From: Octopus sinensis | Taxonomy: Eukaryota | Assembly: GCF_006345805.1 (NCBI RefSeq) | Contig: NC_043008.1 | Location: 28,954,001 to 29,018,000, forward strand | Reading direction: 5' to 3' | DNA: 64,000 bases | Notes under the pieces: model-generated | Database searches by the model: none | What the model was told of the DNA's origin: nothing | Seen by the model: the letters and a program-made list of their open reading frames with translations, nothing else | Shown here: positions 1,432-61,910 of the stretch, piece by piece | Position numbering within the stretch: position 1 is the stretch's first letter | Layout: each line of letters opens with the position of its first letter | Position numbers and translations under genes: made by a program

Positions 1432-1500
<69 letters not shown>

Positions 1501-1701
1501 TATGTAGGTGAATGAATTATCCCAGTATGGATACTTCGGTTAACCGATACCCGGGTAGCAAATTCGCGTCAGAAAACACGGTTGAAGCTACATGCCAAGG
1601 GCAGACTTCCCGTGTTCTCGTGTAGAAATTTGTGTGTTTTCTTTTGACTATGAATAAATGAAAGAATGGAGTCGAACGACGATTTTAACAACATTCCTTT
1701 A

Positions 1702-1784
1702 CTCTCGACATATGTTTCGAAGACTGCATATTCTTAATTCCGAAGGAATAAAGGGTGCATTATGCCACCTTCTCAGTAGGAAAT
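1702..1784 (-). ncRNA. Type I hammerhead ribozyme remnant (core mutated to CUACUGA)
   Basis: Reverse complement reads ATTTC-CTACTGA-GAAGGTGGCATA...TATGCAGTCTTC-GAAAC-ATAT-GTC-GAGAG; topology kept, core mutated. Confidence 0.7.
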
Positions 1785-2364
1785 ACAAGGAACCTAAGTC
1801 AGCATCATGACGAACAGAAACATTTAGATGACTGCCCACATGGTGTCCACAGTGATAATGGGTGTTTCTTTAAAATATTCCGTTATAAGCAATGACGTCA
1901 ACATTGGTTGGATGGAGAAGGTTCTAAAAAGTTCAAGAGTTCAAATTTGGTTGGAAGGAGAAAGTTCTAAGAATAGGAAGGTGACAAAGTGCAAGTTGTA
2001 TGTATGGGGATGTGTGGGCGTTTGCTTTTGTTAATGAGTTTGAGTGTCTATGTGTGTGTATGTATATAACTGCATTCGTGTCCGTGTGTGTGTGTGTGTG
2101 TGTGCGTGATTGAGTATGTGGGGGACAAATGTCAAATACACGTAGTAGTGAGGTGATAAATTTGTGTATGTTTGTTTGATTGTGCGTATGATAGAGAGAG
2201 AGAGAGAGAGAGAGGTAGAAGTAGAGAGAAAGAGGTAAACATACCCCAACGAAATATAGTAGTAGTTCTTCATGTAACGGAGTAGAAAAAAAATATTTGT
2301 CTATGGTGGTGTTGTAGAAATGGAACTAAATTATTAAAATCAAAGAGGCTATCTATATTAATCA

Positions 2365-2754
2365 TCATTCATATGAGTGGAAGGTGTGCTTCTGCCAATG
2401 CTTGCACTTATAGGATTTTTCTATTATTGTGTTTACCATGGGGAACTTGTCGAAAAGGATATAGAAGAGTTCGGAATTACAAATGCCACAATATTTCCTG
2501 CTCTTATAAAAAGGACAGGATACAGACAATCTGGACCAATCCAGCTTGAAAGCTATATTGCCGCCCTTAAGACGCCAAACTAATTTACTTAGTCCTGTAC
2601 TTTGTTGTTTTCTCCTATCTCGGAAAGTTGAATAATGATTGGAAATTCTCTGGGACAATCTAGAAGCTGCCGCACCAATATAGAAGAAGACATCGCTACC
2701 GGAAGAAATTTTACACTGGTAAAAGGAATTTCTAATTTTTGAATTACTGGACAA
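2365..2754 (-). pseudogene. GIY-YIG endonuclease domain of PLE A
   Basis: ORF track 129 aa with FYQC/FYIG motifs, catalytic-region R and H, and C-terminal CxxC and CxH. Confidence 0.85.
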
Positions 2755-4543
2755 GAACTTTAATCTGTTAGGGTTTTCCTAGAGTTTTTATTGTTATGAT
2801 TGCTGTAAATATTATTGCTAGCATTGACCACTATACTATTTCTATTATTGTTATTATTATTATTATTATTATTAATTGTACTATCGCCGGCAATATCCCT
2901 GACTATAGAAATGCTGTCGTTGTTAGCATAAACACTACCACTGTTATTAATCCGACTAATATTATTAATAATATTAACATTGTTAATACTAACGCTGTTA
3001 CGAATGTTGCTATTATCAATACTATTTCTATTATTATTATTCTATGTTTGGTTGGAATTTGTAGGAGTAGTGTTGAAACTACCGGGTGAAGAATCTTTGT
3101 TTAGCAGCTTGTTATTATTGGAGGCACTAATTTGCGAAAGATTTCTAGTGTTAGAGAATGCAATCCTTACCTTATGCGAATTGATAGTAGAGTAATACCT
3201 AGAATTCCTGGGAAAGTTCCTAGCTACGGCTTCACGGAACTGTAAAAGAAGGTTTAAATTGATTTGTTTTCCGAAAGGTGTGACAAACCAGATATAGTTT
3301 TTGTGGACTTAGAATTGCTCATAGCGCTACCAGTTACATTAAAGGAAAGATTTCTGTGCTGGTAAATTGAGGTTGGTTGTCGACTGCCTCCCCTGGTCCG
3401 TAAATTATTTTTCTTATGTACAGGGGTGCCGACGTTGTTAGAGCTGAAATCATTTTTCTCGCTATTTCTATTCTTATTGGTTTTCTTATCCTGGGAAGCA
3501 TATATTGGTTTAGAATGGGCCGGGTCGGTGTATGATACTTTTTCTCTATAACCGGCTTTGGACCAGGCGGCGTTATAAAATTCCGCTTTCTGGTTAAAGA
3601 AGTCGACATTAGCAGATAATTTTGACAGTTTTAAAGAAATGTTTTTAACTAAATTATCTGTAATTGTTTTGGCATGGTTACTGAAAATGCTGATATATTT
3701 AATATTAGTAGAAGGTTTATGATAAGGGAAGTATGAATTATTCTGCAGATTTAGGGTAATGTCTAAGAAGTTGGCTTTTAAGTTAATTCATCGTCGAAAA
3801 CTATGCTCAAGCCCATTCTCCTAAAGAATCTAGCTAATCTGTTCTTAATCTTCTGTATTCTATTTGTAATTCCGAACACTTCTATATCCTTTTCGCCAAG
3901 TTCCCTTGGTAAACACAAAAATAGAAAAATCCTATAAGTGTAAGCATTGGCAGAAGCACATCTTCCACTCATATGAATGATGATTAATATAGATAATCTC
4001 TTTGATTTTAATAATTTAGTTCCACTTCTACAACACCGCCATAGACAATTCCATTTTTCTACACCGTTACATGAACTACTACTATATTTCGTTGGGGTAA
4101 GTTTACCTCTTTCTCTCTATTTCTCCCTCCTCTCTCTCTCTCTATCATACGCACAATCAAACAAACATACACAAATTTATCACCTTACTACTAAATGTAT
4201 TTGACATTTGTCCCCCACACACACAATCACGCGCACACACACACAGACAAGAATGCAGTTATATACATACACACACATAGACACTCAAACTCATTAACAA
4301 AAGCAAGCACCCACGTATCACCATACATACAACTTGCACTTTGTCACCTTCCTATTCTTAGAACTTTCTCCTTCCAACCAAATTTGAACTCTTGAACTTT
4401 TTAGAACCTTCTCCATCCAACCAATTTTGACGTCATTGCTTATAACGGAATATTTTAAAGAAACACTCCTTATCACTGTGGACACCATGTAGGCAGTCAT
4501 CTAAATGTTTTTGTTCGTCATGATGCTGACATAGGTTCCTTGT

Positions 4544-4626
4544 CTTTCCTGCTGAGAAGGCGGCATAATGCACTCTTCATTCCTTCGGAATTAAGAATAT
4601 GCAGTCTTCGAAACATATGTCGAGAG
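4544..4626 (+). ncRNA. Type I hammerhead ribozyme (core variant CUGCUGA, probably impaired)
   Basis: CTTTC-CTGCTGA-GAAGGCGGCATA...TATGCAGTCTTC-GAAAC-ATAT-GTC|GAGAG; palindromic stem III ACATATGT. Confidence 0.75.
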
Positions 4627-4671
4627 TAAAGGAATGTTGTTAAAAATCGTGGTTCGACGCCATTCTTCATT

Positions 4672-4750
<79 letters not shown>

Positions 4751-4757
4751 ATATATA

Positions 4758-4799
<42 letters not shown>

Positions 4800-4846
4800 T
4801 AAATGAAAGAATGGAGTCGAACGAAGATGTTAACAAAATTCCTTTA

Positions 4847-4928
4847 CTCTCGACACATGTTTCGAAGACGGCATACTTTTATTCCGAAGGAATGAAGGGT
4901 GCATTATGCAATCTTCTCTTCAGGAAAG
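4847..4928 (-). ncRNA. Type I hammerhead ribozyme, intact core, PLE B 3' pLTR
   Basis: Reverse complement CTTTC-CTGAAGA-GAAGATTGCATA...TATGCCGTCTTC-GAAAC-ATGT-GTC|GAGAG. Confidence 0.85.
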
Positions 4929-5429
4929 ATAAGGATGATTGCCTACATGGTGACCACAGTGATAACGGGTGTTTTTTTTTAAATCCGTTATTAGCATTGA
5001 CATCAAAATTGGGTAGAAGGAGGAAGTAGTAAAAATAGGTAGGGGACAATATGTATGCTGTACGTATGGGGATGTGCAGGTGTGTGCTTGTGTTAATGAG
5101 TGCAAGTGTTTATGTGTGTGTATGAATGTGTGTATATAACTGCATTTGCGTCTCTCTGTGTGTCTGTGTGTGTGTGTGATTGCGCGTTTGAGATAGACAA
5201 ACGTCAAATATACGTAGTAGTAAGGTGAAATATTTGTGTCTGTGTGTTTGATTGTGTGTGTGATAGAGAAAGAGAGAGAAACATACGTCAAAGATATTTA
5301 GTAGCAATGGAACATATAACGGAGCAATAGGTACGGAGGAGGAAGTAAACGTTGATTGAAGGAATGTTCGAAGGCATAGGCAAGTATAGGAAAGAATTTG
5401 TCTATGGCAGTGGTGTGGACATGAAGCTA

Positions 5430-8027
5430 ATTGTTAAAACTACAGTGGTTATCTTTATCATTTATATGAGTGGAAAGTGTTTTTCTGCCAATGTTTACAT
5501 TTGTACGATCTTTCTATGGGTGTGTTTACTAGGGGAACCTTGGCGAAAAGAATATAGAAGAGTTTAGAATTACAAATGTTACAAAATTGTCTGCTCTTAT
5601 CAAAAGGAAAGGATACAGACAATATGAACCAATTCAACTTGAAAGTTATATTGTTGTCAAACTAATTTGCTTAGCCCTGTACTACGTCGTTTTTTCTTAT
5701 CTCGGAAAGTCGAATAATGATTGGAAATTCTCTTTGATAACTGAGAAGTGGTCGCACCTATATAGAAGAAGACATCGGTACCGGAAGAAATTCTACACTT
5801 GTAAATGGAATTCTTAATTTTGGAATTACTGGCCAAAAATTTTAATCTGTTAGGGTTTTCCTCCGAGATCGAGACGGAGTTTTTATTGTTACGATTGTTG
5901 TTTTTATTACTAATAGCGTTAACAATTACACTATTTCTATTATTATTATTATTATTAATTGAACTGCAATATCTCCGACAAGAGTACCGTTGTTGTCGTT
6001 ACCATCAACACTACCATTGTTATTAACCCGACTAATACTATTATAAATATTATCATTGCTAACACTATCGCTGCTACGAATGCTGTTACTATCAATACTA
6101 TTTCTATTATTCTGATTGTATGATGGGTTGGAATTGGTAAGTTTAGTGTTGGAACTCCCGGGTGAAGAATCTTTGTTTAGTAGCTTGTTATTATGGGAAG
6201 AAATAATTTGTGAAAGATTCCTAGTGTTAGAGAATGCAATTCTTACCTTGTGTGAATTGATAATAGAATGATATCTAGAATTACTGGGAAAGTTCCTAGC
6301 AACGGCTTCACAGAACTGTAAGGAAAGGTTCGATTTAATTTGTTTACCGAAAGGTACTACAAACCAGATACAGTATTTTGTGGACTTTGAATTGTTCCTA
6401 GTGTTATTTGTGACAGTAAGGGGGAAATTTCTGTGTTGGAAATTTGGGGTTGTTTGGCGCTTACCTCCCCTAGTCCGTAAAAAATTTATCTTATGTACAG
6501 GGGTGCTGGCCCTATTAGAATTGAAATCATTATTTTTATTACGAGTAGCTTTACTATCTTGAGAAGCAGATGCTGGTTTAGAATGAGCTGGGTCGATGTA
6601 TGATACTTTTTCCTTATAACCGGCTCTTGACAAGGCGGCGTTATAGATTTCCGCTTTTTGGTTAAAGATGTCGACGTTAGCTGATAATTTTGACAGTCTC
6701 AGAGATATGTTTTTAACTAAATTATCGGTAATTGACTTGGCATGATTACTGAAAATGCTGATATACTTAAGATTAGTAGAAGGTTTATGATAAGGGAAGT
6801 ATGAGTTATTCTGCAGATTGAGGGTAATGTCTAAGAAGTTGGCTTTAGTTAACTCGTCGTCAAAATCTATGCTCAAGCCCATTCGACTAAAAAACCTAAC
6901 TAATCTGTTCTTAACCTTCTGTATTTTTTGGTTTGAAGCTTTCTGGGGGTAAAGCAGACAATCGTCGCGATACAGACCTCCACAGATGTCCGGAAATTGG
7001 TCGGCCATTTCATAGAGAATATAAATTCCGACCAAATCGGCTATCTGGGCGCTGTCTGTACTTCCCAGTAGTACATCAAAGGCGTTAGGGGTGTCTCTAC
7101 AGACCAACAACTTGCTATCGAACTGTATGAAAGATTTTCTAGCTGTTATTATCACATAAATTTCCTCCCTGGAGAGGCCTGCCTTATTGTGTGTGTGCCA
7201 TAGGGCCTTATTAAGTACACTAGGGTTGATTGACGGGTAGAAACTGGATTTATCGAATTGTATAAATTTAGTGTTGGCCTTATCGGTAATAGAAGTAAAC
7301 CAATCTACGACTTGAGCAGAGTTGGACCATAAGTTAAGTTTTAATTTATCAATTAATATAGGTATATCATTATCTAATATGCATTTACTAAGGGTACCGA
7401 TGTCTGAACTGGAAGGGCATATGAGTCGCAATGCTGAGTTGGTATGAAAGTTCTGTTTGTGGTCCTTTAAGATGAATCTTGGTTGTCTGGGGTTCAACGG
7501 TTTCGTCTTCATTTGTAATCCGTAAGTCTCCATAATCTTCTTAGTTTCTAAGTTGGCCTGTCTGAGCATATTCCTACTGGTGGTCCTGTAATTCTTATGT
7601 ATCTCTCTTTTGAGCAGTTCTAAATAATGGCTCTTGGCAAGCTTATATATGTTCCCGGTTTTATCGATTGGACCAGGATAAAGTCTAATCAGTTTATATC
7701 TCTAGAGACTTTATCGAGGTATTTGAGGTGTTTATTCCTGAGGGGTGATTTATGAAATTTAATATTCCTTACGATGTCCCAAAGATCATATTCGAAATTC
7801 TTCAGTCTAGGATTAGGTGGAGGAGTTCCCCTCGACTTAAATAGTTTTTTATATGAAAGGGAGACGTCGTTACTGGTCCGTTTTAGGTCCTCATTATCGT
7901 GGAAGAAGGCGAGCAATCTGATGCGGATGATAAATGCAATTGACTTGTTAATAATTTCCTTAAGGGAGGCTTCTTTTGGTGGTATAGGGATGTCCTTAAG
8001 GGAGGCGTTAATATCGAACAGCTCCAT
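5430..8027 (-). pseudogene. PLE B RT plus GIY-YIG polyprotein, disrupted by a few stops and frameshifts
   Basis: ORFs 7689-8027 and 5926-7569 (547 aa, YRDD). The 547-aa frame extends upstream to about 7685 (DKTGNIYKL...). The endonuclease at about 5430-5810 is in another frame with a TGG>TGA stop in LVW. Confidence 0.9.
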
Positions 8028-8277
8028 TTGCGGGATCGGTTAAGTTAGTAGGTTGTCAGGGAAACTGTATAAGAATATTTAAGTAGGTGAATGAATTATC
8101 CTAGCATGGAAAATTCGGTTAACCGATACCTGGGTAGCAAATTCACGTCAGAAAACACGGTTGAAGCGACCTGTCAAGGGTAGAAACTCCGGGTTCTTGT
8201 GTGGAAATGTGTGTATTTTTTATATATGAACAACTGACAGAATGGAGTCGAACGAAGATGTTAACAAAATTCCTTTA

Positions 8278-8359
8278 CTCTGGACACATATTTCGAAGAC
8301 GGCATACTTTTAATCCGAAGGAATAAAGGGTGCATTATGCAATCTTCTCATCAAGAATG
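8278..8359 (-). ncRNA. Degenerate hammerhead in PLE B upstream pLTR
   Basis: Same layout as 4847-4928 but core TTGATGA, with substitutions in stems I and III. Confidence 0.6.
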
Positions 8360-8928
8360 ATAAGGAGCCTCTCTCAGTCACGAGACGAACAAAAAACTTT
8401 GATGATTGCCTACATGGTGACCACAGTGATAATGGGTGTTTTTTTTTTAAATCCGTTATAAGCATTGACGTCAAAATTGGGTAAAAGGAGGAAGTAGTAA
8501 AAATAGGTAGGGGACATTATGTATGCTGTACGTATGGGGATGTACAGGTGTGTGCTTGTGTTAATGAGTGCAAGTGTTTATGTGTGTGTATGAATGTGTG
8601 TATATAACTGCATTTGTGTTTGTGTGTGTGATTGTGTGTTTGAGATAGACAAACGTCAAATTTACGTAGTAGTAAGGTGAAATATTTGTGTCTGTGTGTT
8701 TGATTGTGTGTGTGATAGAGAGAGAGAGAGAGAAACATACGTCAAAGATATTTAGTAGCAATGGAACATATAACATATATCTCACACACACACACACACA
8801 CACACACAAATGCAGTTATATACACACATTCATACACACACATAAAAAACACCCGTTATCACTGTAGTCACCATGTAGGCAATCATTAAAATTTTTTGTT
8901 TGTCTTGTGACTGAGAGAGGCTCCTTAT

Positions 8929-9010
8929 CTTTCCTGATGAGAAGATTGCATAATGCACGCTTTATTCCTTCGGATTAAAAGTATGCCGTCTTCGAAACAT
9001 GTGTCGAGAG
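8929..9010 (+). ncRNA. Type I hammerhead ribozyme, intact core, PLE B inverted pLTR
   Basis: CTTTC-CTGATGA(8934-8940)-GAAGATTGCATA...TATGCCGTCTTC-GAAAC-ATGT-GTC|GAGAG; predicted cleavage after C9005. Confidence 0.9.
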
Positions 9011-9229
9011 TAAAGGAATTTTGTTAACATTTCGTTCGACTCCATTCTTTCATGTATTCATACATAAAAAAACACACAAATTTCCACACAAGAATCCGGA
9101 GTTTCTACCCTTGACAGGTCACGTCAACCGTGTTTTCTGACGTGAATTTGCTACCCAGGTATCGGTTAAACGAATTTTCCATGCTAGGATAATTCATTGA
9201 CCTACTTAAATATATATATATATATATAT

Positions 9230-13303: not shown

Positions 13304-14779
13304 GCATATATGCATATATATATACACGCACTCACAAACACATATCGCTCGCACCTTCCATCTCTACTATGTGATATATACATTTGAGCGCGTGTGTTGT
13401 GATTTTCAAATCTTTGAATGTGCGTGTGTTGATGTATGTATATGATTGGAAATAAGTAAGAGTATATGCACTAGGTTTGCACATAGAAGGCACAGGGTAA
13501 GCTGATGGTAATCGACTGCTCTGGACGTAGGCTGCATGTTGGGTTGAAATATGTTATGATTTTAAAATACACGACGAAATTTAGAAGTATTGCCAAGAAT
13601 AAAGCTTCTGAAAAAAAAATAATAGCATTACGTGAACCATGCAAATGTGCATGGTTCTTAAATATTCGTATATAATTATAAGAGAAATAATGGATCATGA
13701 CAAAACTTATCTTTGCATAGGAATAAATTATTACCTAAGCATATTTATTTCTACCAACTGAATCCTTATAACGTGGTCTTATGCGAGCATTAGCAAAACT
13801 GTTGGACAAATATATCTTATGATTTCAGACAATATCGAAATCTCCTTTATTGCTAATAAATGTGATATCAGATTAATTTGCACATTCTTTTCTGAACAAT
13901 AGAAGTCCATGATAGTTTGTTCCATATTATTCTATTTTCATATGACAAATTTTCATCAAAGTATTGTGAGTGATATATGGTAGATAGATTTCTTTGGGAC
14001 AGTGGTAAATAAGGCGTTTCTGTGTATAAGTGGTAGTAAATCAGTTACTCACTTTAAAATCGGCAATGGTATTTGATTTGCTGAAATGGATTCTAACCTA
14101 TTAAGATACATTGTGTTGTGACCTCGACTTTTGCTCAAAATAATCTCGCCTCCTGATACCATTCATGGTGTACACTGAATAGAATCAGGAGCACAGATTT
14201 TCCTATTCAAAGCAACCAAAATATATAACGTAAAATCATGATTCTCCACTTTGACTTAACCACGAGAGGCAATCTTGCATTCGTCACGGCAACACAAAAC
14301 AGTTAAATTCTCCGTGAATTCTCTTATGGAATAATTATTGATGACGAATAGTAGTCTTGTTACTTTAGTTATATTCGGCCGTGCACCAAATATCATTGAC
14401 CATATCTAGCCATAATATGAAATTATTGTGCATTAAAACAAAACAATATATATTTCAAACGTGCGGTATATGAATAAAAGATTTCATATATGTATGTGTG
14501 TGTGTACGTGAGCGACTATGCACGTGCGCAACAATTCGCATACGTGATGTACACATGCATGATTGGACGTTTGGGCAGAACTGACGGAGGCGATCAGATA
14601 AGTCAGAAAGTGAACAAATTAAATATAAAGTAGTATAGAGTGCCTAATCTTTGTATACAGTATTATAAATGTAGCTTCATTACCGCCAAATAATATTAGA
14701 TGATGCAAAAAGCAATTAGGATTCAATTCAGGTGAATACATATATATATATACATACAAATATATATATGTATATATAT

Positions 14780-14810
<31 letters not shown>

Positions 14811-15019
14811 TATATACCTATATATACATATATATATATAATTATATAAAAGGGCTTAGTAAAATAAATTACTTTGCCGCATACTGAACTCGTTAGAAAT
14901 AGCAGCTAAAAAAACTATTTCTAACACTTAAAGAAAACCTCTCTCATATAGTGTTTGCTCAATTCAACTCAAGAAAGTATGAGGGTAGAGACATTAAAAA
15001 ATCAAATGCAAAGGTTATT

Positions 15020-16717
15020 TGAGTACGTACGTTTCAAGATTAGCCAAAATCGACCCTTCTCTCATCAGCTCAGAATGCCCTTGTTTGAATTTGAAAACAC
15101 TGAAAATGGGAGCATACCCTTTCGGCTTGTTATCGCTTCTGAAGATCTGTTCCAAACTAACAGTGCCAACAAAATCAAATATGCAAGAGAAAAATTTCTG
15201 CTCTCCCCTTTCCACCAGCGTGGGTTAAAATCAGCAAACACTATGCTTTTTTCGGTAAAATCCGAGACAATTAAGTAGAGAGAGATGAATTATAATTTCA
15301 ACAATTGAGGGTAAAATTAATTAATTAATTAATCAATTTCACCAAGTATTCAGTATGCAAAGGGACCATTTAAGGCAAATTCAAATTATTACATTATATA
15401 AAAGGGCTTAGTAAAATAAATTACTTTGCCGTATACTGAACTCGTTAGAAATAGCAGCTAAAAAAACTATTTCTAACACTTAAAGAAAACCTCTCTATAT
15501 AGTGTTTGCTCAATTCAACTCAAGAAAGTATGAGGGTAGAGACATTAAAAAATCAAATGCCAAGGTTATTTGAGTACGTACGTTTCAAGATTAGCCAAAA
15601 TCGACCCTTCTCTCATCAGCTCAGAATGCCCTTGTTTGAATTTGAAAACACTGAAAATGGGAGCATAACCCTTTCGGCTTGTTATCGCTTCTGAAGATCT
15701 GTTCCAAACTAACAGTGCCAACAAACTCAAATATGCAAGAGAAAAATTTCTGCTCTCCCCTTCCACCAGCGTGGGTTAAAATCAGCAAACACTATGCTTT
15801 TTTCGGTAAAATCCGAGACAATTAAGTAGAGAGAGATGAATTATAATTTCAACACAATTGAGGGTAAAATTAATTAATTAATTAATCAATTTCACCAAGT
15901 ATTCAGTATGCAAAGGGACCATTTAGGCAAATTCAAATTATTACATTATATAAAAGGGCTTAGTAAAATAAATTACTTTCCGCATACTGAACTCGTTAGA
16001 AATAGCAGCTAAAAAAACTATTTCTAACACTAAAGAAAACCTCTCTCATATAGTGTTTGCTCAATTCAACTCAAGAAAGTATGAGGGTATAGACATTAAA
16101 AAATCAAATGCAAAGGTTATTGAGTACGTACGTTTCAAGATTAGCCAAAATCGACCCTTCTCTCATCAGCTCAGAATGCCCTTGTTTGAATTTGAAAACA
16201 CTGAAAATGGGAGCATACCCTTCGGCTTGTTATCGCTTCTGAAGATCTGTTCCAAACTAACAGTGCCAACAAACTCAAATATGCAAGACAAAAATTCTGC
16301 TCTCCCCTTTCCACCAGCGTGGGTTAAAATCAGCAAACACTATGCTTTTTTCGGTAAAATCCGAGACAATTAAGTAGAGAGAGATGAATTATAATTTCAA
16401 CAATTGAGGGTAAAATTAATTATTAATTAATCAATTCACCAAGTATCAGTATGCAAAGGGACCATTTAAGGCAAATTCAAATTATTACATTATATAAAAG
16501 GGCTTAGTAAAATAAATTACTTTGCCGCATACTGAACTCGTTAGAAATAGCAGCTAAAAAAAACTTTCTAACACTTAAAGAAAACTCTCTCATATAGTGT
16601 TTGCTCAATTCAACTCAAGAAAGTATGAGTGTAGAGACATTAAAAAATCAATGCAAAGGTTATTTGAGTACGTACGTTTCAAGATTAGCCAAAATCGACC
16701 CTTCTCTCATCAGCTCA
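15020..16717 (-). ncRNA. Four minimal type I hammerheads at 15020-15072, 15571-15623, 16121-16173 and 16665-16717
   Basis: Reverse complement TGAG-CTGATGA-GAGA(AGGGTCGATTTTGGCTAA)TCTT-GAAAC-GTAC-GTA|CTCA; stem I TGAG/CTCA, palindromic stem III ACGTACGT. Confidence 0.9.
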
Positions 16718-17633
16718 GAATGCCCTTGTTTGAATTTGAAAACAAAACTGAAAATGGGAGCATACCCTTTCGGCTTGTTATCGCTTCTGAAGATCTGTTC
16801 CAAACTAACAGTGCCAACAACTCAAATATGCAAGAGAAAAATTTCTGCTCTCCCCTTTCCACCAGCGTGGGTTAAAATCAGCAAACACTATGCTTTTTTC
16901 GGTAAAATCCGAGACAATTAAGTAGAGAGAGATGAATTATAATTTCAACAATTGAGGGTAAAATTAATTAATTAATTAATCAATTCACCAAGTATTCAGT
17001 ATGCAAAGGGACCATTTAAGGCAAACAAATTCAAATTATTACATTATATAAAAGGGCTTAGTAAAATAAATTACTTTGCCGCATACTGAACTCGTTAGAA
17101 ATAGCAGCTAAAAAAACTATTTCTAACACTTAAAGAAAACCTCTCTCATATAGTGTTTGCTCAATTCAATTTGATTGAGAGGTTTTCTTTAAGTGTTAGA
17201 AATTTGAATTGAGAGGTTTTCTTTAAGTGTTAGAAATAGTTTTTTTAGCTGCTATTTCTAACGAGTTCAGTATGCAGCAAAGTAATTTATTTTACTAAGC
17301 CCTTTTATATAATGTAATAATTTGAATTTGCCTTAAATGGTCCCTTTGCATACTGAATACTTGGTGAAATTGATTAATTAATTAATTAATTTTACCCTCA
17401 ATTGTTGAAATTATAATTCATCTCTCTCTACTTAATTGTCTCGGATTTTACCGAAAAAAGCATAGTGTTTGCTGATTTTAAAACCACGCTGGTGGAAAGG
17501 GGAGAGCAGAAATTTTTGTCTTGCATATTTGAGTTTGTTGGCACTGTTAGTTTGGAACAGATCTTCAGAAGCGATAACAAGCCGAAAGGGTATGCTCCCA
17601 TTTTCAGTGTTTTCAAATTCAAACAAGGCATTC

Positions 17634-20436
17634 TGAGCTGATGAGAGAAGGGTCGATTTTGGCTAATCTTGAAACGTACGTACTCAAATAACCTTTGCAT
17701 TTGATTTTTTAATGTCTCTACCCTCATACTTTCTTGAGTTGAATTGAGCAAACACTATATGAGAGAGGTTTTCTTTAAGTGTTAGAAATAGTTTTTTTAG
17801 AGCTGCTATTTCTAACGAGTTCAGTATGCGGCAAAGTAATTTATTTTACTAAGCCCTTTTATATAATGTATAATTTGAATTTGCCTTAAATGGTCCTTTG
17901 CATACTGAATACTTGGTGAAATTGATTAATTAATTAATTAATTTTACCCTCAATTGTTGAAATTATAATTCATCTCTCTCTACTTAATTGTCTCGGATTT
18001 TACCGAAAAAAGCATAGTGTTTGCTGATTTTAACCCACGCTGGTGGAAAGGGGAGAGCAGAAATTTTTCTCTTGCATATTTGAGTTTGTTGGCACTGTTA
18101 GTTTGGAACAGATCTTCAGAAGCGATAACAAGCCGAAAGGGTATGCTCCCATTTTCAGTGTTTTCAAATTCAAACAAGGGCATTCTGAGCTGATGAGAGA
18201 AGGGTCGATTTTGGCTAATCTTGAAACGTACGTACTCAAATAACCTTTGCATTTGATTTTTTAATGTCTCTACCCTCATACTTTCTTGAGTTGAATTGAG
18301 CAAACACTATATGAGAGAGGTTTTCTTTAAGTGTTAGAAATAGTTTTTTTAGCTGCTATTTCTAACGAGTTCAGTATGCGGCAAAGTAATTTATTTTACT
18401 AAGCCCTTTTATATAATGTAATAATTTGAATTTGCCTTAAATGGTCCCTTTGCATACTGAATACTTGTGAAATGATTAATTAATTAATTAATTTTACCCT
18501 CAATTGTTGAAAATTATATTCATCTCTCTCTCTTACTTATTGTCTCGGATTTTACCGAAAAAAGCATAGTGTTTGCTGATTTTAACCCACGCTGGTGGAA
18601 AGGGGAGAGCAGAAATTTTTCTCTTGCATATTTGAGTTTGTGTTGGCAATGTTAGTTTGGAACAGATCTTCAGAAGCGATAACAAGCCGAAAGGGTATGC
18701 TCCCATTTTCAGTGTTTTCAAATTCAAACAAGGGCATTCTGAGCTGATGAGAGAAGGGTCGATTTTGGCTAATCTTGAAACGTACGTACTCAAATAACTT
18801 TGCATTTGATTTTTTATGTCTCTACCCTCATACTTTCTTGAGTTGAATTGAGCAAACACTATATGAGAGAGGTTTTCTTTAAGTGTTAGAAATTAGTTTT
18901 TAGCTGCTATTTCTAACGAGTTCAGTATGCGGCAAAGTAATTTATTTTACTAAGCCCTTTTATATATGTAATAATTTGAATTTGCCTTAAATGGTCCCTT
19001 TGCATACTGAATACTTGGTGAAATTGATTAATTAATTAATTATTTTACCCTCAATTGTTGAAATTATAATTCATCTCTCTCTACTTAATTGTCTCGGATT
19101 TTACCGAAAAAAGCATAGTGTTTGCTGATTTTAACCCACCTGGTGGAAAGGGGAGAGCAGAAATTTTTCTCTTGCATATTTGAGTTTGTTGGCACTGTTA
19201 GTTTGGAACAGATCTTCAGAAGCGATAACAAGCCGAAAGGGTATGCTCCCATTTTCAGTGTTTTCAAATTCAAACAAGGGCATTCTGAGCTGATGAGAGA
19301 AGGGTCGATTTTGGCTAATCTTGAAACGTACGTACTCAAATAACCTTTGCATTTGATTTTTTAATGTCTCTACCCTCATACTTTCTTGAGTTGAATTGAG
19401 CAAACACTATATGAGAGAGGTTTTCTTTAAGTGTTAGAAATAGTTTTTTTAGCTGCTATTTCTAACGAGTTCAGTATGCGGCAAAGTAATTTATTTTACT
19501 AAGCCCTTTTATATAATGTAATAATTTGAATTTGCCTTAAATGGTCCCTTTGCATACTGAATACTTGGTAAATTGATTAATTAATTAATTAATTTTACCC
19601 TCAATTGTTGAAATTATAATTCATCTCTTCTACTTAATTGTCTCGGATTTTACCGAAAAAAGCATAGTGTTTGCTGATTTTAACCCACGCTGGTGGAAGG
19701 GGAGAGCAGAAATTTTTGTCTTGCATATTTGAGTTTGTTGGCACTGTTAGTTTGGAACAGATCTTCAGAAGCGATAACAAGCCGAAAGGGTATGCTCCCA
19801 TTTTCAGTGTTTTCAAATTCAAACAAGGCATTCTGAGCTGATGAGAGAAGGGTCGATTTTGGCTAATCTTGAAACGTAACGTACTCAAATAACCTTTGCA
19901 TTTGATTTTTTAATGTCTCTACCCTCATACTTTCTTGAGTTGAATTGAGCAAACACTATATGAGAGAGGTTTTCTTTAATGTTAGAAATAGTTTTTTTAG
20001 CTGCTATTTCTAACGAGTTCAGTATGCGCGCAAAGTAATTTATTTTACTAAGCCCTTATATAATGTAATAATTTGAATTTGCCTTAAATGGTCCCTTTGC
20101 ATACTGAATACTTGGTGAAATTGATTAATTAATTAATTAATTTTACCCTCAATTGTTGAAATTATAATTCATCTCTCTCTACTTAATTGTCTCGGATTTT
20201 ACCGAAAAAAGCATAGTGTTTGCTGATTTTAACCCACGCTGGTGGAAAGGGGAGAGCAGAAATTTTTCTCTTGCATATTTGAGTTTGTTGGCACTGTTAG
20301 TTTGGAACAGATCTTCAGAAGCGATAACAAGCCGAAAGGGTATGCTCCCATTTTCAGTGTTTTCAAATTCAAACAAGGCATTCTGAGCTGATGAGAGAAG
20401 GGTCGATTTTGGCTAATCTTGAAACGTACGTACTCA
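17634..20436 (+). ncRNA. Six minimal type I hammerheads at 17634-17686, 18186-18238, 18740-18792, 19286-19338, 19834-19887 and 20384-20436
   Basis: Same motif on the plus strand; the 19834 copy has one extra A in stem III. Confidence 0.9.
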
Positions 20437-20711
20437 AATAACCTTTGCATTTGATTTTTTAATGTCTCACCCTCATACTTTCTTGAGTTGAATTGAGCAA
20501 ACACTATAGAGAGAGGTTTTCTTTAAGTGTTAGAAATAGTTTTTTTAGCTGCTATTTCTAACGAGTTCAGTATGCGGCAAAGTAATTTATTTTACTAAGT
20601 CCTTTTATATAATGTAATAATTTGAATTTGCCTTAAATGGTCCCTTTGCATACTGAATACTTGGTGAAATTGATTAATTAATTAATTAATTTTACCCTCA
20701 ATTGTTGAAAT

Positions 20712-20774
<63 letters not shown>

Positions 20775-35584: not shown

Positions 35585-37015
35585 AGACTATGCTATGACA
35601 GTAACTATTTATATGACCATGACCGCAGTAAATTCTGCCGCAACAGGTCACAGAAGGGAAGACCACCCACTATCACTTCAGTAATGAAGAACAGCACCAC
35701 AGAGTGCTGGAGTGGCTGGAGCGCACCCACAGAAAACCCTGAGAACAACAATTAGGTGAAAGAAATGATTGCACATGCAATAGGGGCCAGTTTAAAAACC
35801 ACCTTGAAGAACAGCATAGTAAAGTTTAACAAAAACTATACATGCAATTTCAAAGAGCAGCCATTGGTGTAGGTGTAGCTGGAGACATGGCTGGCCTCTT
35901 CATGACCTGGTGGGACAAAAAACTTAAACAAATGCTATCAGAACAGTCCACAACTCTACAGTAGATATGTACATAATATTAATATCATAGTTAGGACCAA
36001 CTGTAGTGACGTTAATGTAAAAAGTGAGAATGTAATGGAGAGCATCCAGCAAATAGCTAACTTCATCCACCAATGTATCAAGGTAACTATAGATTACCCC
36101 ACTAAGCACTCCAACAATAGACTCCCTGTACTTGATACTGAACTTTGGTTAGAGACTATGAACAATAGATTGCAGCTCGTCCACTCCTATTACATGAAAC
36201 ATAACTTCAAATTATGTTGTTCGCAAGATATCAGCTTTGTCACACTACATGATAATTAACATAATAAATGCAGGCCTAGTTAGAATAATGAACAATGTGT
36301 CCCCACTATGCAAACGCTATGAAACGAAAACAACATATACAGAACTTCATGCACCGCTTGCAGTTCTCTGGATATGATCAAAAAGATAGGGTTCGAGAAT
36401 ACAGCGGGGGCGGGGCTAGAAAGAAATTAGACACCATTATACGTAATGATATCAGTGGTACCTGCCCCAGATATAGAAACAAAGAATGGAATAGGATACA
36501 AAGAACTTGTGATAAAGCAAATAGGGTGAATACGTGGTATAAAAACGACAATATCAAGTAGTGATATTTTTAGAGGCCACAGTCCATGGAGAACAAGCCC
36601 GTAGATTTAGAAAAGCTCTGAAGGAGAAAAAACTCAACATTAAGATTGTTGAAAAATCAGGGAAATCCGTCAGATCACAACTCTGTAGGACGTACCCCTT
36701 TGAGAATACCATATGCACCAATGGTAACTGCATGGTATGTAGCATTAGCCCTGGCATTAACTGTAGAACTCGAAATGTAGCCTACAGCATAAGATACATA
36801 TAAGTTTCTTGTAAAGATATGAACATGAGACGTACATAGGGGAGACATCTAGGGGCATTGCGGAACGACTAAATGACAATCTGGGACTTTATAAAGACAA
36901 AATATACTCCTCCATACTCTACCAATATGCCAAAGACCACCATGGCGGTAACTTGGGTCAACTTCACATCTGCTTCTCATCCAAGCTCCCAAAAGACACA
37001 ACACTCAAATACGGG
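35585..37015 (+). mobile_element. PLE remnant F (family of G)
   Basis: KGRPPTIT, YSRYV, LPVLD, RLQFSGY, KIVEKSG...PF...C..C...NCRTRNV, YIGETSR remnants; broken by stops. Confidence 0.8.
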
Positions 37016-37809
37016 AGTACGTCCTTATATATGAACTTATCCAAAACTAAATAGGATATATACATAGTAGATATCATAGCTACATACCCATAGTTTACAC
37101 AGGTAGAGTAGAATAGTTAGTTAGTGGGCTGTTATGTTGTTAGATGTATGTATGTGTGTGTGTGGCTGTGGTGTGTGTGCACATGTATGTAAGCATATGG
37201 ATATGAAAATAAACAGATCAACATACTGACGGAGAGGTACATAGGTTATATGAACAGACAGGCACACATACGTAAATGGAGACTGAAATATATGACCATA
37301 TATACACACACACTTTACTCCACACAAGGACACATATGGAGACACATGTCCACAGATATAAAGATGCACATACATACATACAAACATGGTACATAGCTAC
37401 AAAATACACACACACAGATATGCACACAAGGTGCATACATATAGAAACACACGCTCGCGCACACATACATACATAAATATAAAAACACGGACATGCAAGC
37501 ACAAAAATATGCAGAATACATACATATATACATAGGCATACACACACATGTATACATACATAAACATACATATGTACGTGCATGCATGCATACATAGACA
37601 CACACACACAGTGACCCACACACATGCACACAAATAAACAAAAATAAGAAAAAATGTGGACATTTTACCGATGGTTTGTTAAATAATAAGGCAGAAAAGA
37701 AATTACCCTCCCCCAACACAACAGTGTATATATATATATATATATATATACATTATTGGTGAATTGAGGAAATGGAGCTGAACGCAGATTGAACAGAAAT
37801 CGTTTTATT

Positions 37810-37895
37810 TCATTCTACACGTGTTTCGAAAGGCACAAATTACCAAAATCCGATTGAATAATGGGACCATATTGTGTCTTTCTCTTCAGGAAGAA
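37810..37895 (-). ncRNA. Type I hammerhead, PLE C left arm
   Basis: Reverse complement of the 40090-40174 motif. Confidence 0.85.
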
Positions 37896-39005
37896 AAAAG
37901 GAAATCCGTTAGAGAAACAAAAACAGAACAGAGGCGGAGCAAAAACCAAATCGAACTATGCTCCTAAGAGCCCATGGCGAAACTGTTTATCAGTGTATGC
38001 TGAGAACCGGTGGCTGAAGAATTCTACAGGTCAGGCATCGGTCAATCATGTGGGTGAGGGTGTATAGATGTTCTTAGTGACCGAGAATAAAGTTCTGACT
38101 ATTTAAGGATATTGGATGTTTTATAAGGGGCGAGAAAAAATCTACTTAGAGACGTGTGTGTGTGTATCCTGTTCTATATATGTGTGTGTTGGCGTAGGGG
38201 TAGAAAACACTTTTTGTGTACGTGTGTGCGTTTGATCGTTCGGCTGTCAGTGGCTACTGCCGTGATAACCGTTGGGTGGCAGAAAGAAAAAATATATATA
38301 TATATATTATGTTTTATGTGTGTGTGTGTTCATCTGAGCCTGCCTTGTCAAGGAAACCCCCCGCTGTGAAAAAACCAAGCCCCGTTTGTCTTACAGGAGT
38401 AATTCCCCTTGCAGTGGATAATCGTAGATATCTAAAGGCTATTTCAGAATTTGTTACCAAGGGCTATGGGTGCCGGTATTATTTATAAACGCTATTTAAA
38501 AGCCAGATAAGTGTAACGCCGCCAATGGGGGCATCGAAAAGCCGACTGTAAGAGCCCGTTACCATCCGGCCTCTGGCAAACAAAATATGGAAGAGTTCGG
38601 AGACACAAGGTTACACTGTCTTCTGCCCCTATCAAATGGGAGGGCCACCGACAAAATTGACCATTCCAGCCTGTAGCTTAAGTTCGTATCCTTCAGTCGC
38701 CATATTAGCTTACTGAGTCCCGTGGTGGCGCTTGTTCACGTCCCGAAAAGTTGCGTAATGATTGGAGACACGCAAAGACAATCTTGAGGATGATGCCCCT
38801 ACATAAGTGAAGACATCTGAGTCCGTGTAAACCTTGCATTGGTAGACGGCGTTTTTGATCTTGGAGTTCGCCGACGTAAATCTTAATCTGCTAGGATTAG
38901 TTTCTGAAATTAGAACTGCGTTCCTGTCACTATATTCGTTGCAATGACAGTACTCTGATAGATAGTGGAGAATCAGGGGTTATTCCTATAGTTAATAGTG
39001 ACGTA

Positions 39006-39494
39006 GTGGAAAATAGAGTAGTAAGCGGCTGCAGGTCTCGGAACGAATATAGTGACAGGAACGCAGTTCTAATTTCAGAAACTAATCCTAGCAGATTAAG
39101 ATTTACGTCGGCGAACTCCAAGATCAAAAACGCCGTCTACCAATGCAAGGTTTACACGGACTCAGATGTCTTCACTTATGTAGGGGCATCATCCTCAAGA
39201 TTGTCTTTGCGTGTCTCCAATCATTACGCAACTTTTCGGGACGTGAACAAGCGCCAGACCACGGGACTCAGTAAGCTAATATGGCGACTGAAGGATACGA
39301 ACTTAAGCTACAGGCTGGAATGGTCAATTTTGTCGGCGGCCCTCCCATTTGATAGGGGCAGAAGACAGTGTAACCTTTGTGTCTCCGAACTCTTCCATAT
39401 TTTGTTTGCCAGAGGCCGGATGGTAAACGGGCTCTTACAGTCGGCTTTTCGATGCCCCCATTGGCGGCGTTACACTTATCTGGCTTTTAAATAG
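39006..39494 (+). CDS. GIY-YIG endonuclease domain of PLE C (open frame, 5'-truncated element)
   Basis: AVYQCK...TYVGASS...RVSNHYATF...LSKLIWRLK...CNLC...CPHW; homologous to 2365-2754. Confidence 0.8.
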   Translation: MENRVVSGCRSRNEYSDRNAVLISETNPSRLRFTSANSKIKNAVYQCKVYTDSDVFTYVGASSSRLSLRVSNHYATFRDVNKRQTTGLSKLIWRLKDTNLSYRLEWSILSAALPFDRGRRQCNLCVSELFHILFARGRMVNGLLQSAFRCPHWRRYTYLAFK

Positions 39495-40089
39495 CGTTTA
39501 TAAATAATACCGGCACCCATAGCCCTTGGTAACAAATTCTGAAATAGCCTTTAGATATCTACGATTATCCACTGCAAGGGGAATTACTCCTGTAAGACAA
39601 ACGGGGCTTGGTTTTTCACAGCGGGGGGTTTCCTTGACAAGGCAGGCTCAGATGAACACACACACACATAAAACATAATATATATATATATATTTTTCTT
39701 TCTGCCACCCAACGGTTATCACGGCAGTAGCCACTGACAGCCGAACGATCAAACGCACACACGTACACAAAAAGTGTTTTCTACCCCTACGCCAACACAC
39801 ACATATATAGAACAGTATACACACACACACGTCTCTAAGTAGATTTTTTCTCGCCCCTTATAAAACATCCAATATTCCTTAAATAGTCAGAACTTTATTC
39901 TCGGTCACTAAGAACATCTATACACCCTCACCCACATGATTGACCGATGCCTGACCTGTAGAATTCTTCAGCCACCGGTTCTCAGCATACACTGATAAAC
40001 AGTTTCGCCATGGGCTCTTAGGAGCATAGTTCGATTTGGTTTTTGCTCCGCCTCTGTTCTGTTTTTGTTTCTCTAACGGATTTCCTTTT

Positions 40090-40174
40090 TTCTTCCTGAA
40101 GAGAAAGACACAATATGGTCCCATTATTCAATCGGATTTTGGTAATTGTGCCTTTCGAAACACGTGTAGAATGA
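40090..40174 (+). ncRNA. Type I hammerhead, PLE C right arm
   Basis: TTCTTC-CTGAAGA-GAAAGACACAAT...ATTGTGCCTTTC-GAAAC-ACGT-GTA|GAATGA; palindromic ACACGTGT; predicted cleavage after A40168. Confidence 0.85.
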
Positions 40175-40382
40175 AATAAAACGATTTCTGTTCAATCTGC
40201 GTTCAGCTCCATTTCCTCAATTCACCAATAATGTTTTAATTTCAATTATCCGCACCAACGCACGGTTGCAACGCCAGATGTTGTACCTCCAACCGTGCTG
40301 TTTACTGCTGTGATTTTTGCTACTAAGGTATCGGTTAACTTTTGATTAATCTACAACAAGATTATTCATCTTCCTATTTCAC

Positions 40383-40417
<35 letters not shown>

Positions 40418-61893: not shown

Positions 61894-61910
61894 AACTTTT
61901 ACTTTTTGTA

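What the first reader, a model, noticed from the sequence alone, without database searches (positions are those of the whole stretch)
14841..20714. The '550-bp satellite' is a hammerhead-ribozyme concatemer: candidate cephalopod retrozyme / circular RNA system
Seen: 10 near-identical monomers each carry a minimal type I hammerhead with canonical CUGAUGA and GAAAC cores, a GUA cleavage triplet, a 4-bp stem I and a palindromic stem III (ACGUACGU); one copy has an extra A in stem III. There is no RT-coding capacity. Established: such minimal hammerheads work as dimers in tandem repeats (newt satellite 2, Schistosoma Sm-alpha, PLE pLTRs), and metazoan non-LTR retrozymes are tandem hammerhead repeats whose transcripts self-cleave to monomers and circularise, thought to be mobilised by PLEs. 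Inference: read-through transcription gives about 550-nt monomers/circRNAs, and the array is a rolling-circle reverse-transcription product. The monomer is larger than the roughly 170-400 nt I recall for described animal retrozymes; I cannot confirm whether this family is already described.
Basis: partly seen in the sequence, partly recalled or inferred. Interest (0 to 1): 0.93.

Follow-up and report, generated by a model that had tools for sequence, protein, structure and literature searches.

The report
Hammerhead-ribozyme tandem repeat in an octopod
A 5.9-kb block of a 552-bp non-coding repeat in an octopus-like genome carries a hammerhead self-cleaving RNA motif in every unit, which makes it a new example of a known class of animal mobile repeats ("retrozymes"), built here as two mirror-image arrays like the Penelope-type retroelements beside it.

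Summary
Positions 14841-20715 are a 552-bp repeat with ten type I hammerhead (HHR) motifs. Each has CUGAUGA, GAAA, a GUA cleavage triplet and the ACGUACGU helix III. Nine of the ten 53-nt motifs are identical and one has an extra A. A matching descriptor found nothing in 85 Mb of random sequence.

Three corrections:
- The block is not one concatemer. It is two head-to-head arrays, four units on the minus strand and six on the plus, meeting at an exact palindrome centre (17169/17170). Both 3' ends run into (TA)n.
- A 552-bp unit lies inside the published retrozyme range (51-972 bp).
- No Rfam hammerhead model matches, and pair 10.1-11.1 is G·U rather than G-C.

Two Penelope-like element (PLE) insertions in the same window carry their own hammerheads and share the layout: diverging strands with (TA)n at both ends. 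This favours a non-autonomous, PLE-mobilised retrozyme-like element.

Folding favours the two-unit "double hammerhead" (+3.2 versus +8.4 kcal/mol above the minimum). Transcription, cleavage, circular RNA, other genomic copies and selection on the motif could not be tested.

Verdict: a new member of a known kind, of moderate interest.

The parts
14841..17169 (-). Left arm: 4.2 monomers with the ribozyme sense on the - strand. The 5' (inner) end is consensus position 57 at 17169. The 3' (outer) end is consensus position 183 at 14841, where ...UUUUAUAUAAU merges into (AT)n.
17170..20715 (+). Right arm: 6.4 monomers with the ribozyme sense on the + strand. It starts at the palindrome centre, also at consensus position 57. 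The 3' (outer) end is consensus position 285 at 20715, where ...GAAAUUAUA merges into (TA)n.
17170..17237 (+). Centre-proximal rearrangement found only in the right arm: two copies of a 34-nt unit (consensus 57-66 joined to 85-107, so a 17-nt internal deletion). It breaks the otherwise perfect palindrome.
   Evidence: (TRF 17168-17237, period 34)
15020..15072 (-). Hammerhead motif 1 of the left arm (53 nt, helix I 5' strand to helix I 3' strand); H17 at 15024.
15571..15623 (-). Hammerhead motif; H17 at 15575.
16121..16173 (-). Hammerhead motif; H17 at 16125.
16665..16717 (-). Hammerhead motif; H17 at 16669.
17634..17686 (+). Hammerhead motif; predicted cut after 17682.
18186..18238 (+). Hammerhead motif; predicted cut after 18234.
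18740..18792 (+). Hammerhead motif; predicted cut after 18788.
19286..19338 (+). Hammerhead motif; predicted cut after 19334.
19834..19887 (+). Hammerhead motif with one extra A in loop 3 (GUAACGUA), which breaks the 8-nt palindrome; predicted cut after 19883.
20384..20436 (+). Hammerhead motif; predicted cut after 20432.
14736..14848 (.). Left flanking (AT)n microsatellite, abutting the 3' end of the left arm.
20712..20755 (.). Right flanking (TA)n microsatellite, abutting the 3' end of the right arm and followed by (GA)n.

Best explanation
The block is an octopod member of the animal hammerhead-bearing tandem repeats, that is, non-LTR retrozymes or non-autonomous derivatives of Penelope-like elements.

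Shown here:
- The repeat is a 552-nt non-coding unit with 34% GC.
- Each unit has a complete type I hammerhead core with a 2-bp helix III closed by the palindromic loop GUAC.
- Ten such units form two arrays whose ribozyme strands diverge from an exact palindromic centre. Each 3' end runs into (TA)n.
- Two hammerhead-bearing PLE insertions in the same window have the same layout.

Inferred mechanism:
- A transcript spanning two or more units pairs the ACGUACGU segments of neighbouring motifs into an 8-bp helix III, forming a double hammerhead.
- A host RtcB-type ligase can circularise these monomers.
- Circular or multimeric RNA is copied by a PLE reverse transcriptase. Copying is primed from a nick in (TA)n by microhomology to internal UAUA(A)U sites of the RNA (consensus positions 176-183 and 279-285), giving multimeric cDNA.
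- The second, inverted arm arises as in PLE insertions, either by priming from the other strand or by fold-back of the first cDNA.
For: - Motif presence and identity. The motif is beyond chance, with 0 hits in 200 shuffles and 0 in 85 Mb of Markov sequence.
- A dimeric transcript forms the inter-unit helix III with probability about 0.89. Its minimum-energy fold already pairs the 3' strand of helix I of unit 1 with the 5' strand of unit 2.
- Enforcing the double hammerhead costs +3.2 kcal/mol above the minimum, against +8.4 for a single hammerhead.
- A two-strand cofold gains 11.4 kcal/mol over two separate monomer folds.
- All 59 variable alignment columns are private to one monomer, which fits units born identical.
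- Both arms start at consensus position 57, and both outer ends stop at UAUA-type sites inside (TA)n. The flanks are not mirror copies of each other.
- PLE-A (1458-9213) and PLE-B (37695-40446) also have diverging sense strands, hammerheads in their terminal repeats and (TA)n at both outer ends.
- PMC8557442 lists partial tandems, an adjacent inverted 5'-truncated copy and a (TA)n insertion bias as PLE hallmarks.
- The literature places such hammerheads in tandem repeats that work as dimers and links retrozymes to PLEs (PMC4209133, PMC7229834, PMC7761336, bioRxiv 10.64898/2026.07.22.740005).
- The monomer RNA folds better than shuffles (z = -3.2), and 61% of the circular form is paired.
Against: - No Rfam hammerhead model matches, even at E<=10 on 101 nt. 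The PLE-A motif scores 18.1 bits on the same kind of search.
- The 10.1-11.1 pair is G·U, and helix II is weak (-4.6 kcal/mol, three G·U pairs).
- There is no covariation, because the copies are near-identical. The 53-nt motif is not less variable than the rest of the monomer: 17% of windows of that size have as few changes.
- The monomer has no significant similarity to the PLE terminal repeats in the window (z about 1). The only hint is a 13-nt match in helix II (P about 0.005).
- No other copy was found in the remaining 58 kb, in two fetched octopod loci, in metagenome or viral contigs, or in the protein collections.
- The antisense strand is at least as structured as the sense strand (z = -4.2).
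- Published in vitro tests of predicted retrozyme dimers often fail (1 of 9 cleaved), and PLE-type hammerheads cleave poorly in vitro.
- Neither the inner nor the outer array ends lie at the cleavage site, so this locus gives no direct trace of a cleaved template.
Confidence: 0.6

Rival explanations
1. This is ordinary satellite DNA. A hammerhead-bearing seed, such as a fragment of a PLE terminal repeat or an old retrozyme, was amplified in place by unequal crossing-over or replication slippage. Part of the array was then inverted by a DNA-level fold-back. The ribozyme motif is a passenger with no present activity, and the array never moved as RNA.
For: - The locus is a single one as far as can be seen.
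- There is no sign of constraint on the motif relative to the rest of the unit.
- The motif deviates from the standard: G·U at 10.1-11.1, a weak helix II and no Rfam match.
- The window is full of microsatellites, so (TA)n flanks are not rare here.
- The 2026 preprint itself discusses local amplification of retrozyme-derived minisatellites.
Against: - All ten cores are intact, whereas three of the five PLE-A terminal-repeat hammerheads nearby have core mutations.
- Every variant is private to one monomer, with no higher-order pattern.
- The diverging-strand layout, with both 3' ends in (TA)n at UAUA sites, repeats that of two PLE insertions in the same window. An inversion at a random point of a satellite would not produce this.
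Confidence: 0.25
2. The mirror-image arrangement is an assembly or long-read artefact, such as a fold-back chimeric read or a mis-join inside a repeat. The true locus would then be one head-to-tail array.
For: - Differences between copies are mostly single-base indels, each private to one copy (40 of 59 variable columns). This is the pattern of unpolished long-read sequence.
- The two arms start at exactly the same consensus position.
- PLE-B is also a nearly perfect palindrome whose arms differ mainly by small shifts in register.
Against: - The arms differ in length (2.3 and 3.5 kb).
- They end at different consensus positions (183 and 285).
- Their flanks are unrelated.
- The right arm alone has a 17-nt deletion and a 34-nt duplication next to the centre.
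- Both palindromes in the window coincide with element boundaries. PLE literature describes this as a real feature that troubles assemblies.
Confidence: 0.12
3. The hammerhead-like motif is a chance resemblance in an AT-rich repeat.
For: No curated Rfam model recognises it.
Against: The descriptor gave 0 hits in 85 Mb of composition-matched sequence, so fewer than about 0.005 are expected per window. The helix III is the exact 8-nt palindrome typical of animal type I hammerheads. The motif also sits in the genomic setting, a tandem repeat near PLEs, where such ribozymes are known to occur.
Confidence: 0.02
4. This reading is not exclusive of the others. Read-through transcription across the palindromic centre would give a hairpin RNA with a stem of about 2.3 kb. 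Such an RNA would feed small-RNA silencing of the repeat family.
For: The arms are 98-100% complementary over hundreds of bases. The centre folds as a hairpin strong enough to give a sub-threshold Rfam microRNA-precursor match (mir-7552, 35.7 bits).
Against: There are no expression or small-RNA data. The ribozyme strands diverge from the centre, so a transcript through the centre would have to start on the antisense strand of one arm.
Confidence: 0.1

Closest known systems
Metazoan non-LTR retrozymes (Cervera & de la Pena 2020, PMC7229834; Li, Clavereau & Pollet 2026, bioRxiv 10.64898/2026.07.22.740005)
   Same: Both are tandem non-coding repeats of low GC with a type I hammerhead in every unit. 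Both have a weak helix III that favours dimeric cleavage, and both co-occur with PLEs. The unit length lies inside the 51-972 bp range.
   Different: Expression, cleavage and circular RNA are untested here. Dispersal is unknown. The motif lacks the standard G10.1-C11.1 pair. The array is two inverted halves inside (TA)n; I found no description of this for retrozymes in the papers read. No cephalopod example appears in the searchable literature.
[quoted passage not shown] 2021, PMC8557442)
   Same: Both have a short helix I and a 2-bp helix III with a 4-nt loop. The GUA triplet is shared with PLE-B in this window. Both show tandem plus inverted copies with 3' ends in (TA)n.
   Different: No RT/GIY-YIG ORF lies between the repeats. 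There is no detectable sequence homology to the two PLE terminal repeats present in the window. Helix II is 26 nt here, against about 53 nt in the local PLE motifs.
Newt satellite 2 and Schistosoma Sm-alpha hammerhead satellites
   Same: Each is a satellite-like repeat of a few hundred bp with a type I hammerhead. Cleavage is dimeric through an extended helix III, and helix I has an internally looped extension.
   Different: The taxon and sequence are different. The unit is longer (552 versus about 330 bp). Activity is not shown.

Membership tests
Hammerhead ribozyme, type I | Conserved core C3-U4-G5-A6-N7-G8-A9 and G12-A13-A14 | tested here: met
   CUGAUGA and GAA are present in all 10 copies.
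Hammerhead ribozyme, type I | A15.1-U16.1 pair, followed by H17 (not G) at the cleavage site | tested here: met
   GAAA-C-GUAC-G-U-A: A15.1 pairs with U16.1 and H17 = A.
Hammerhead ribozyme, type I | Three helices around the core, with helix I open-ended (type I topology) | tested here: met
   Helix I is UGAG/CUCA, extendable to 4+3+4 bp. Helix II is GAGA/UCUU plus 5 further pairs. Helix III is 2 bp plus a 4-nt loop.
Hammerhead ribozyme, type I | G10.1-C11.1 pair closing helix II (usual in natural hammerheads; stated from my own knowledge) | tested here: not met
   All copies have G10.1·U11.1. The effect on activity is unknown.
Hammerhead ribozyme, type I | Score at or above the Rfam RF00163 gathering threshold (34 bits) | tested here: not met
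   There is no hit at gathering, none at E<=10 on 7.5 kb and none at E<=10 on 101 nt. The neighbouring PLE-A motif reaches only 18.1 bits, so the model is also insensitive to this kind of variant.
Hammerhead ribozyme, type I | Covariation supporting the helices | tested here: inconclusive
   The copies are near-identical and no relatives could be retrieved.
Hammerhead ribozyme, type I | Site-specific self-cleavage | not testable with these tools
   This needs in vitro transcription of monomer and dimer constructs.
Metazoan non-LTR retrozyme | Tandem repeat with a type I hammerhead in every unit | tested here: met
   10 of 10 units carry it. This matches the definition of an 'active' element given in the 2026 preprint.
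Metazoan non-LTR retrozyme | Non-coding, low GC (<45%), unit of a few hundred bp | tested here: met
   34% GC. ORFs are <=108 aa and a consensus-length 107-aa ORF has no homologue. The 552-bp unit lies within 51-972 bp, though above the 150-450 bp of the 2020 paper.
Metazoan non-LTR retrozyme | Many copies or arrays dispersed in the genome | not testable with these tools
   No eukaryotic genome collection is on hand. None was found in the other 58 kb or in 43 kb of two other octopod loci.
Metazoan non-LTR retrozyme | Expressed as monomer-length linear and circular RNA | not testable with these tools
   No transcript data are available.
Metazoan non-LTR retrozyme | Co-occurrence with PLEs in the same genome | tested here: met
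   PLE-like RT plus GIY-YIG ORFs and hammerhead-bearing terminal repeats lie in the same window. The PLE call rests on motif reading and a weak GIY-YIG Pfam hit (E = 0.017).
PLE pseudo-LTR derivative | Sequence homology of the unit to a PLE terminal repeat | tested here: not met
   Local alignments to the PLE-A and PLE-B repeats score like shuffles (z about 1). The only hint is a 13-nt helix II match (P about 0.005). PLE families elsewhere in the genome were not available.
PLE pseudo-LTR derivative | PLE-type insertion architecture: tandem copies, an adjacent inverted copy and a microsatellite target | tested here: met
   compared with the description in PMC8557442.

The most novel reading that the evidence does not exclude
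The locus is the footprint of one integration event. Multimeric cDNA of a hammerhead circular (or multimeric) RNA was laid down by PLE machinery from a nick in (TA)n, and a second inverted arm was made by opposite-strand priming or fold-back. This would be structural evidence of how, and by which enzyme, animal retrozymes integrate. The 2020 review says retrozyme sequences alone cannot answer that question.
Probability: 0.3. Interest if true: 0.6.

Novelty: new member of a known kind. Interest (0 to 1): 0.4.

Why it matters
Hammerhead tandem repeats and their circular RNAs are known in cnidarians, mussels, amphibians and fishes. I found no cephalopod example in the searchable literature.

If this element is active, it would be an abundant ribozyme-made circular RNA in an octopod.

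This locus also shows an insertion layout (diverging arrays, a shared inner end, 3' ends at UAUA sites in (TA)n) that matches the neighbouring Penelope-like elements. That bears on the open question of which retroelement mobilises animal retrozymes.

The finding extends a known class rather than opening a new one.

Tried and rejected
- **Rfam.** The whole window at gathering thresholds, the array at E<=10 and a single 101-nt motif at E<=10 gave no hammerhead or other ribozyme family for the satellite. The microRNA-like hits are microsatellite or palindrome by-products.
- **Protein route to other copies.** The 107-aa antisense ORF had no exact record and no homologue. Exact look-ups of two window ORFs, meant to name the assembly, also failed.
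- **DNA pattern scans.** Both metagenome scans and one viral scan returned nothing. These collections are not eukaryotic genomes, so this says little.
- **Fetched octopod loci.** The Octopus sinensis and Argonauta hians loci around PLE homologues hold no satellite and no hammerhead.
- **Constraint on the motif.** The 53-nt hammerhead is not less variable than other windows of the monomer.
- **Homology to local PLE terminal repeats.** None was found.
- **Strand-specific RNA structure.** Both strands fold better than shuffles, so this is uninformative.
- **Naming the PLE ORFs.** Pfam and PDB sequence searches gave only a weak GIY-YIG hit.
- **Rejected ideas.** Chance motif, and flanks that mirror each other as in a simple fold-back read.

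Full report
**What is there**

Positions 14841-20715 hold a repeat with start-to-start spacings of 544-554 bp. TRF missed it because its longest period is 500.

I cut the array at the predicted ribozyme sites and aligned eight full units, which gave a 552-nt consensus. GC is 34%, against 37% for the window.

The units differ at 59 alignment columns. Every variant is private to one unit, and 40 of the 59 columns are small indels. This pattern fits either unpolished long-read sequence or a very young array. It leaves no covariation to analyse.

**The motif**

All ten units contain UGAG-CUGAUGA-GAGAAGGGUCGAUUUUGGCUAAUCUU-GAAAC-GUAC-GUA^CUCA. Nine copies of this 53-nt stretch are identical. The copy at 19834-19887 has one extra A in loop 3.

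In standard hammerhead numbering the following are all present:
- the core C3-A9
- G12-A14
- the A15.1-U16.1 pair
- H17 = A

Helix III is 2 bp closed by GUAC, so A15.1 to U16.1 reads as the 8-nt palindrome ACGUACGU. Helix I is 4 bp. The minimum-energy fold extends it to 4+3+4 bp with a bulge and a 2x2 internal loop. This recalls the internally looped helix I of the newt "extended" hammerheads (PMC6155905).

Helix II is weak:
- It has four closing pairs, starting with G10.1·U11.1 rather than the usual G-C.
- An internal loop follows, then five pairs of which three are G·U.
- Its stability is -4.6 kcal/mol.

**Is it chance?**

I used a descriptor requiring the exact core, helices I and II of at least 4 bp, helix III of at least 2 bp, and UH. 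It found the ten satellite motifs plus one other site (8934) in the window.
- It found nothing in 200 dinucleotide shuffles of the other 58 kb.
- It found nothing in 85 Mb of first-order Markov sequence.

The expected number per window is therefore below about 0.005.

Against this, no Rfam hammerhead model reports the motif at gathering score, at E<=10 on 7.5 kb, or at E<=10 on 101 nt. On the same kind of search the site at 8928-9011 scores 18.1 bits against Hammerhead_1, whose threshold is 34. The curated model is thus insensitive to this local style of hammerhead, and the satellite motif departs from it further still.

**The array is two arrays**

Four motifs lie on the minus strand (14841-17169) and six on the plus strand (17170-20715). 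Inverted repeats between the halves are up to 100% complementary over 523 nt.

Mapped to the consensus, where position 1 is the first base after the cut:
- Both arms begin at consensus position 57, at an exact palindrome centre (17169/17170).
- The ribozyme strands diverge from that centre.
- The left arm ends at position 183 (UUUUAUAUAAU) inside (AT)n.
- The right arm ends at position 285 (GAAAUUAUA) inside (TA)n.

Only the right arm has a centre-proximal 17-nt deletion and a 34-nt duplication (17170-17237). The sequences outside the two microsatellites are unrelated to each other, so this is not a simple fold-back read that duplicated its flanks. Neither the inner nor the outer ends coincide with the cleavage site.

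**Context**

The window comes from an octopod. The best relatives of a 591-aa ORF at 7701-5929 (minus strand) are from Octopus sinensis (52% identity) and Argonauta hians.

That ORF carries reverse-transcriptase-like motifs (FDKSSFYPSI, YRDD, FLD; my reading, with no Pfam hit). A GIY-YIG-like ORF follows it (Pfam E = 0.017). This is the domain order of canonical Penelope-like elements (PLEs).

*PLE-A (1458-9213):*
- It has tandem minus-strand copies with a repeated terminal segment.
- It also has an inverted plus-strand copy at 8844-9213.
- The terminal segment carries a hammerhead with a 53-nt helix II and the sequence GAAAC-AUGU-GUC.
- The hammerhead is intact at 8934-9005 (+) and at 4923-4852 (-). 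It is core-mutated in three other copies.

*PLE-B (37695-40446):*
- It is a nearly perfect palindrome, with arm segments 98-100% complementary.
- Its hammerheads lie at 37889-37816 (-) and 40096-40168 (+). They use CUGAAGA and a GUA triplet.

In both composites the sense strands diverge and both outer 3' ends run into (TA)n. PMC8557442 describes exactly these traits for PLEs: partial tandems, an adjacent inverted 5'-truncated copy and a (TA)n bias. The satellite array has the same layout.

**How it most likely works**

The literature states that animal type I hammerheads with a 1-2 bp helix III and a palindromic loop cleave poorly as single motifs. In tandem transcripts they fold into an active dimer (PMC4209133; PMC6155905).

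The folding results here fit that picture:
- Two 74-nt motifs cofold at -36.2 kcal/mol, against 2 x -12.4 for the separate folds, and form the 8-bp helix III.
- In a 735-nt transcript holding two motifs, the inter-unit helix III has a pairing probability of about 0.89.
- The minimum-energy fold of that transcript already pairs the helix I strands across units.
- Enforcing the whole double hammerhead costs 3.2 kcal/mol above the minimum, against 8.4 for a single hammerhead.

From here on the account is inference by analogy with described retrozymes (PMC7229834, PMC7761336):
- cleavage after GUA;
- ligation of the 552-nt monomers into circles;
- reverse transcription by a PLE enzyme;
- integration.

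Three features fit a single priming-and-copying event by PLE-type machinery but do not prove it: the two 3' ends at UAUA-type sites within (TA)n, the shared inner end, and the all-private variants. Whether the template was circular or a linear multimer cannot be decided from this locus.

**What weakens it**

- There is no evidence of transcription, cleavage or circles.
- There is no second locus in the other 58 kb, in 43 kb of two other octopod loci, or in the protein, metagenome and viral collections. None of these collections is a proper test for a eukaryotic repeat.
- The unit has no significant homology to the two local PLE terminal repeats. The only hint is a 13-nt match in helix II to PLE-B (P about 0.005).
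- The 53-nt motif is no less variable than 17% of equal-sized windows of the unit.
- The antisense RNA is at least as structured as the sense RNA.
- Predicted retrozyme dimers often fail in vitro: 1 of 9 cleaved in Xenopus. PLE-type motifs cleave weakly.
- The G·U at 10.1-11.1 is an added risk. My recollection that this pair is usually G-C was not checked against a paper.

**Comparison and novelty**

The locus meets every structural criterion of a metazoan non-LTR retrozyme that could be tested. It fails the Rfam score, the G10.1-C11.1 pair, and homology to the local PLE repeats.

Its unit length is not unusual. The 2020 paper gives 150-450 bp, but the 2026 preprint reports 51-972 bp with a mean of 650 bp in ray-finned fishes.

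I found no paper describing hammerhead repeats or retrozymes in cephalopods. A 2026 repeat annotation of Octopus vulgaris does not mention ribozymes or retrozymes.

It is therefore a new member of a known kind. The mirror-image, (TA)n-bounded layout shared with neighbouring PLEs is the most useful new detail.

I give it an interest of 0.4. A specialist would not be surprised by the element itself, but could use the locus to test the proposed link between retrozymes and PLEs.

Noticed in passing
window 1458-9213: A composite Penelope-like insertion. Tandem minus-strand copies hold an RT-like ORF (7701-5929), GIY-YIG-like ORFs (5998-5660 and 2778-2368) and a 5'-truncated second copy (4116-3257). 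There is also an inverted copy at 8844-9213. (TA)n lies at both outer ends. Homologues in Octopus sinensis and Argonauta hians are annotated with unrelated names ('myb-like protein I', 'GATA zinc finger domain-containing protein 14-like').
   Followed up: partly
window 8928-9011 (+) and 4923-4852 (-): A second hammerhead family in the PLE-A terminal repeat, with a 53-nt helix II, GAAAC-AUGU-GUC and a helix I of about 12 bp. It scores 18.1 bits to Rfam Hammerhead_1, below the threshold of 34. Three further copies of the repeat (near 8354, 1740 and 4560) have mutated cores.
   Followed up: yes
window 37695-40446: A near-perfect palindrome (arm segments 98-100% complementary, about 100-nt centre near 38990) made of a 5'-truncated PLE with a GIY-YIG-like ORF (38901-39491). 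A third hammerhead family (CUGAAGA, GUA triplet) lies at 37889-37816 (-) and 40096-40168 (+). The left arm lacks about 200 nt present in the right arm. The mirror symmetry continues about 30 nt beyond the (TA)n tracts, which may be the 30-40 bp PLE 'tail'.
   Followed up: partly
window 43973-45133 (-) and 35906-36256 (+): Fragments of a different, canonical-looking PLE, with a GIY-YIG motif of the type GTVYQIEY...CIAETSRSIKDQFKEH. No hammerhead was found next to them.
   Followed up: no
window 61890-63999 (+); 46119-49012 (-) and 51483-54146 (+): A LINE-type ORF with an AP-endonuclease domain (Pfam E = 1.9e-12) and the start of an RT domain, running off the window end. There are also two copies, in opposite orientation, of another RT-bearing element with frameshifted ORFs.
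   Followed up: no
window 17121-17198 (-): The palindrome centre of the array folds as a hairpin that matches Rfam mir-7552 at 35.7 bits (threshold 59, E = 0.0044). I read this as a by-product of the inverted junction, not as a microRNA gene.
   Followed up: partly
window 18195-18222 compared with 40103-40155: A 13-nt stretch of the satellite's helix II (GAUUUUGGCUAAU) matches helix II of the PLE-B hammerhead (GAUUUUGG-UAAU), with P about 0.005 by shuffling. This is a possible trace of common origin, and the only one found.
   Followed up: yes
consensus positions about 401-408 of each monomer (e.g. window 18083-18090): UAUUUGAG is a perfect 8-nt complement of CUCAAAUA, the 3' strand of helix I just after the cut. 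In the monomer's minimum-energy fold these two pair. This would hold a released monomer in a non-cleaving shape.
   Followed up: partly
whole window: The window is unusually dense in microsatellites (81 TRF rows in 64 kb, mostly (TA)n, (CA)n, (GA)n and tri- or tetranucleotide runs). This lowers the weight of any single (TA)n flank as evidence for target choice.
   Followed up: no
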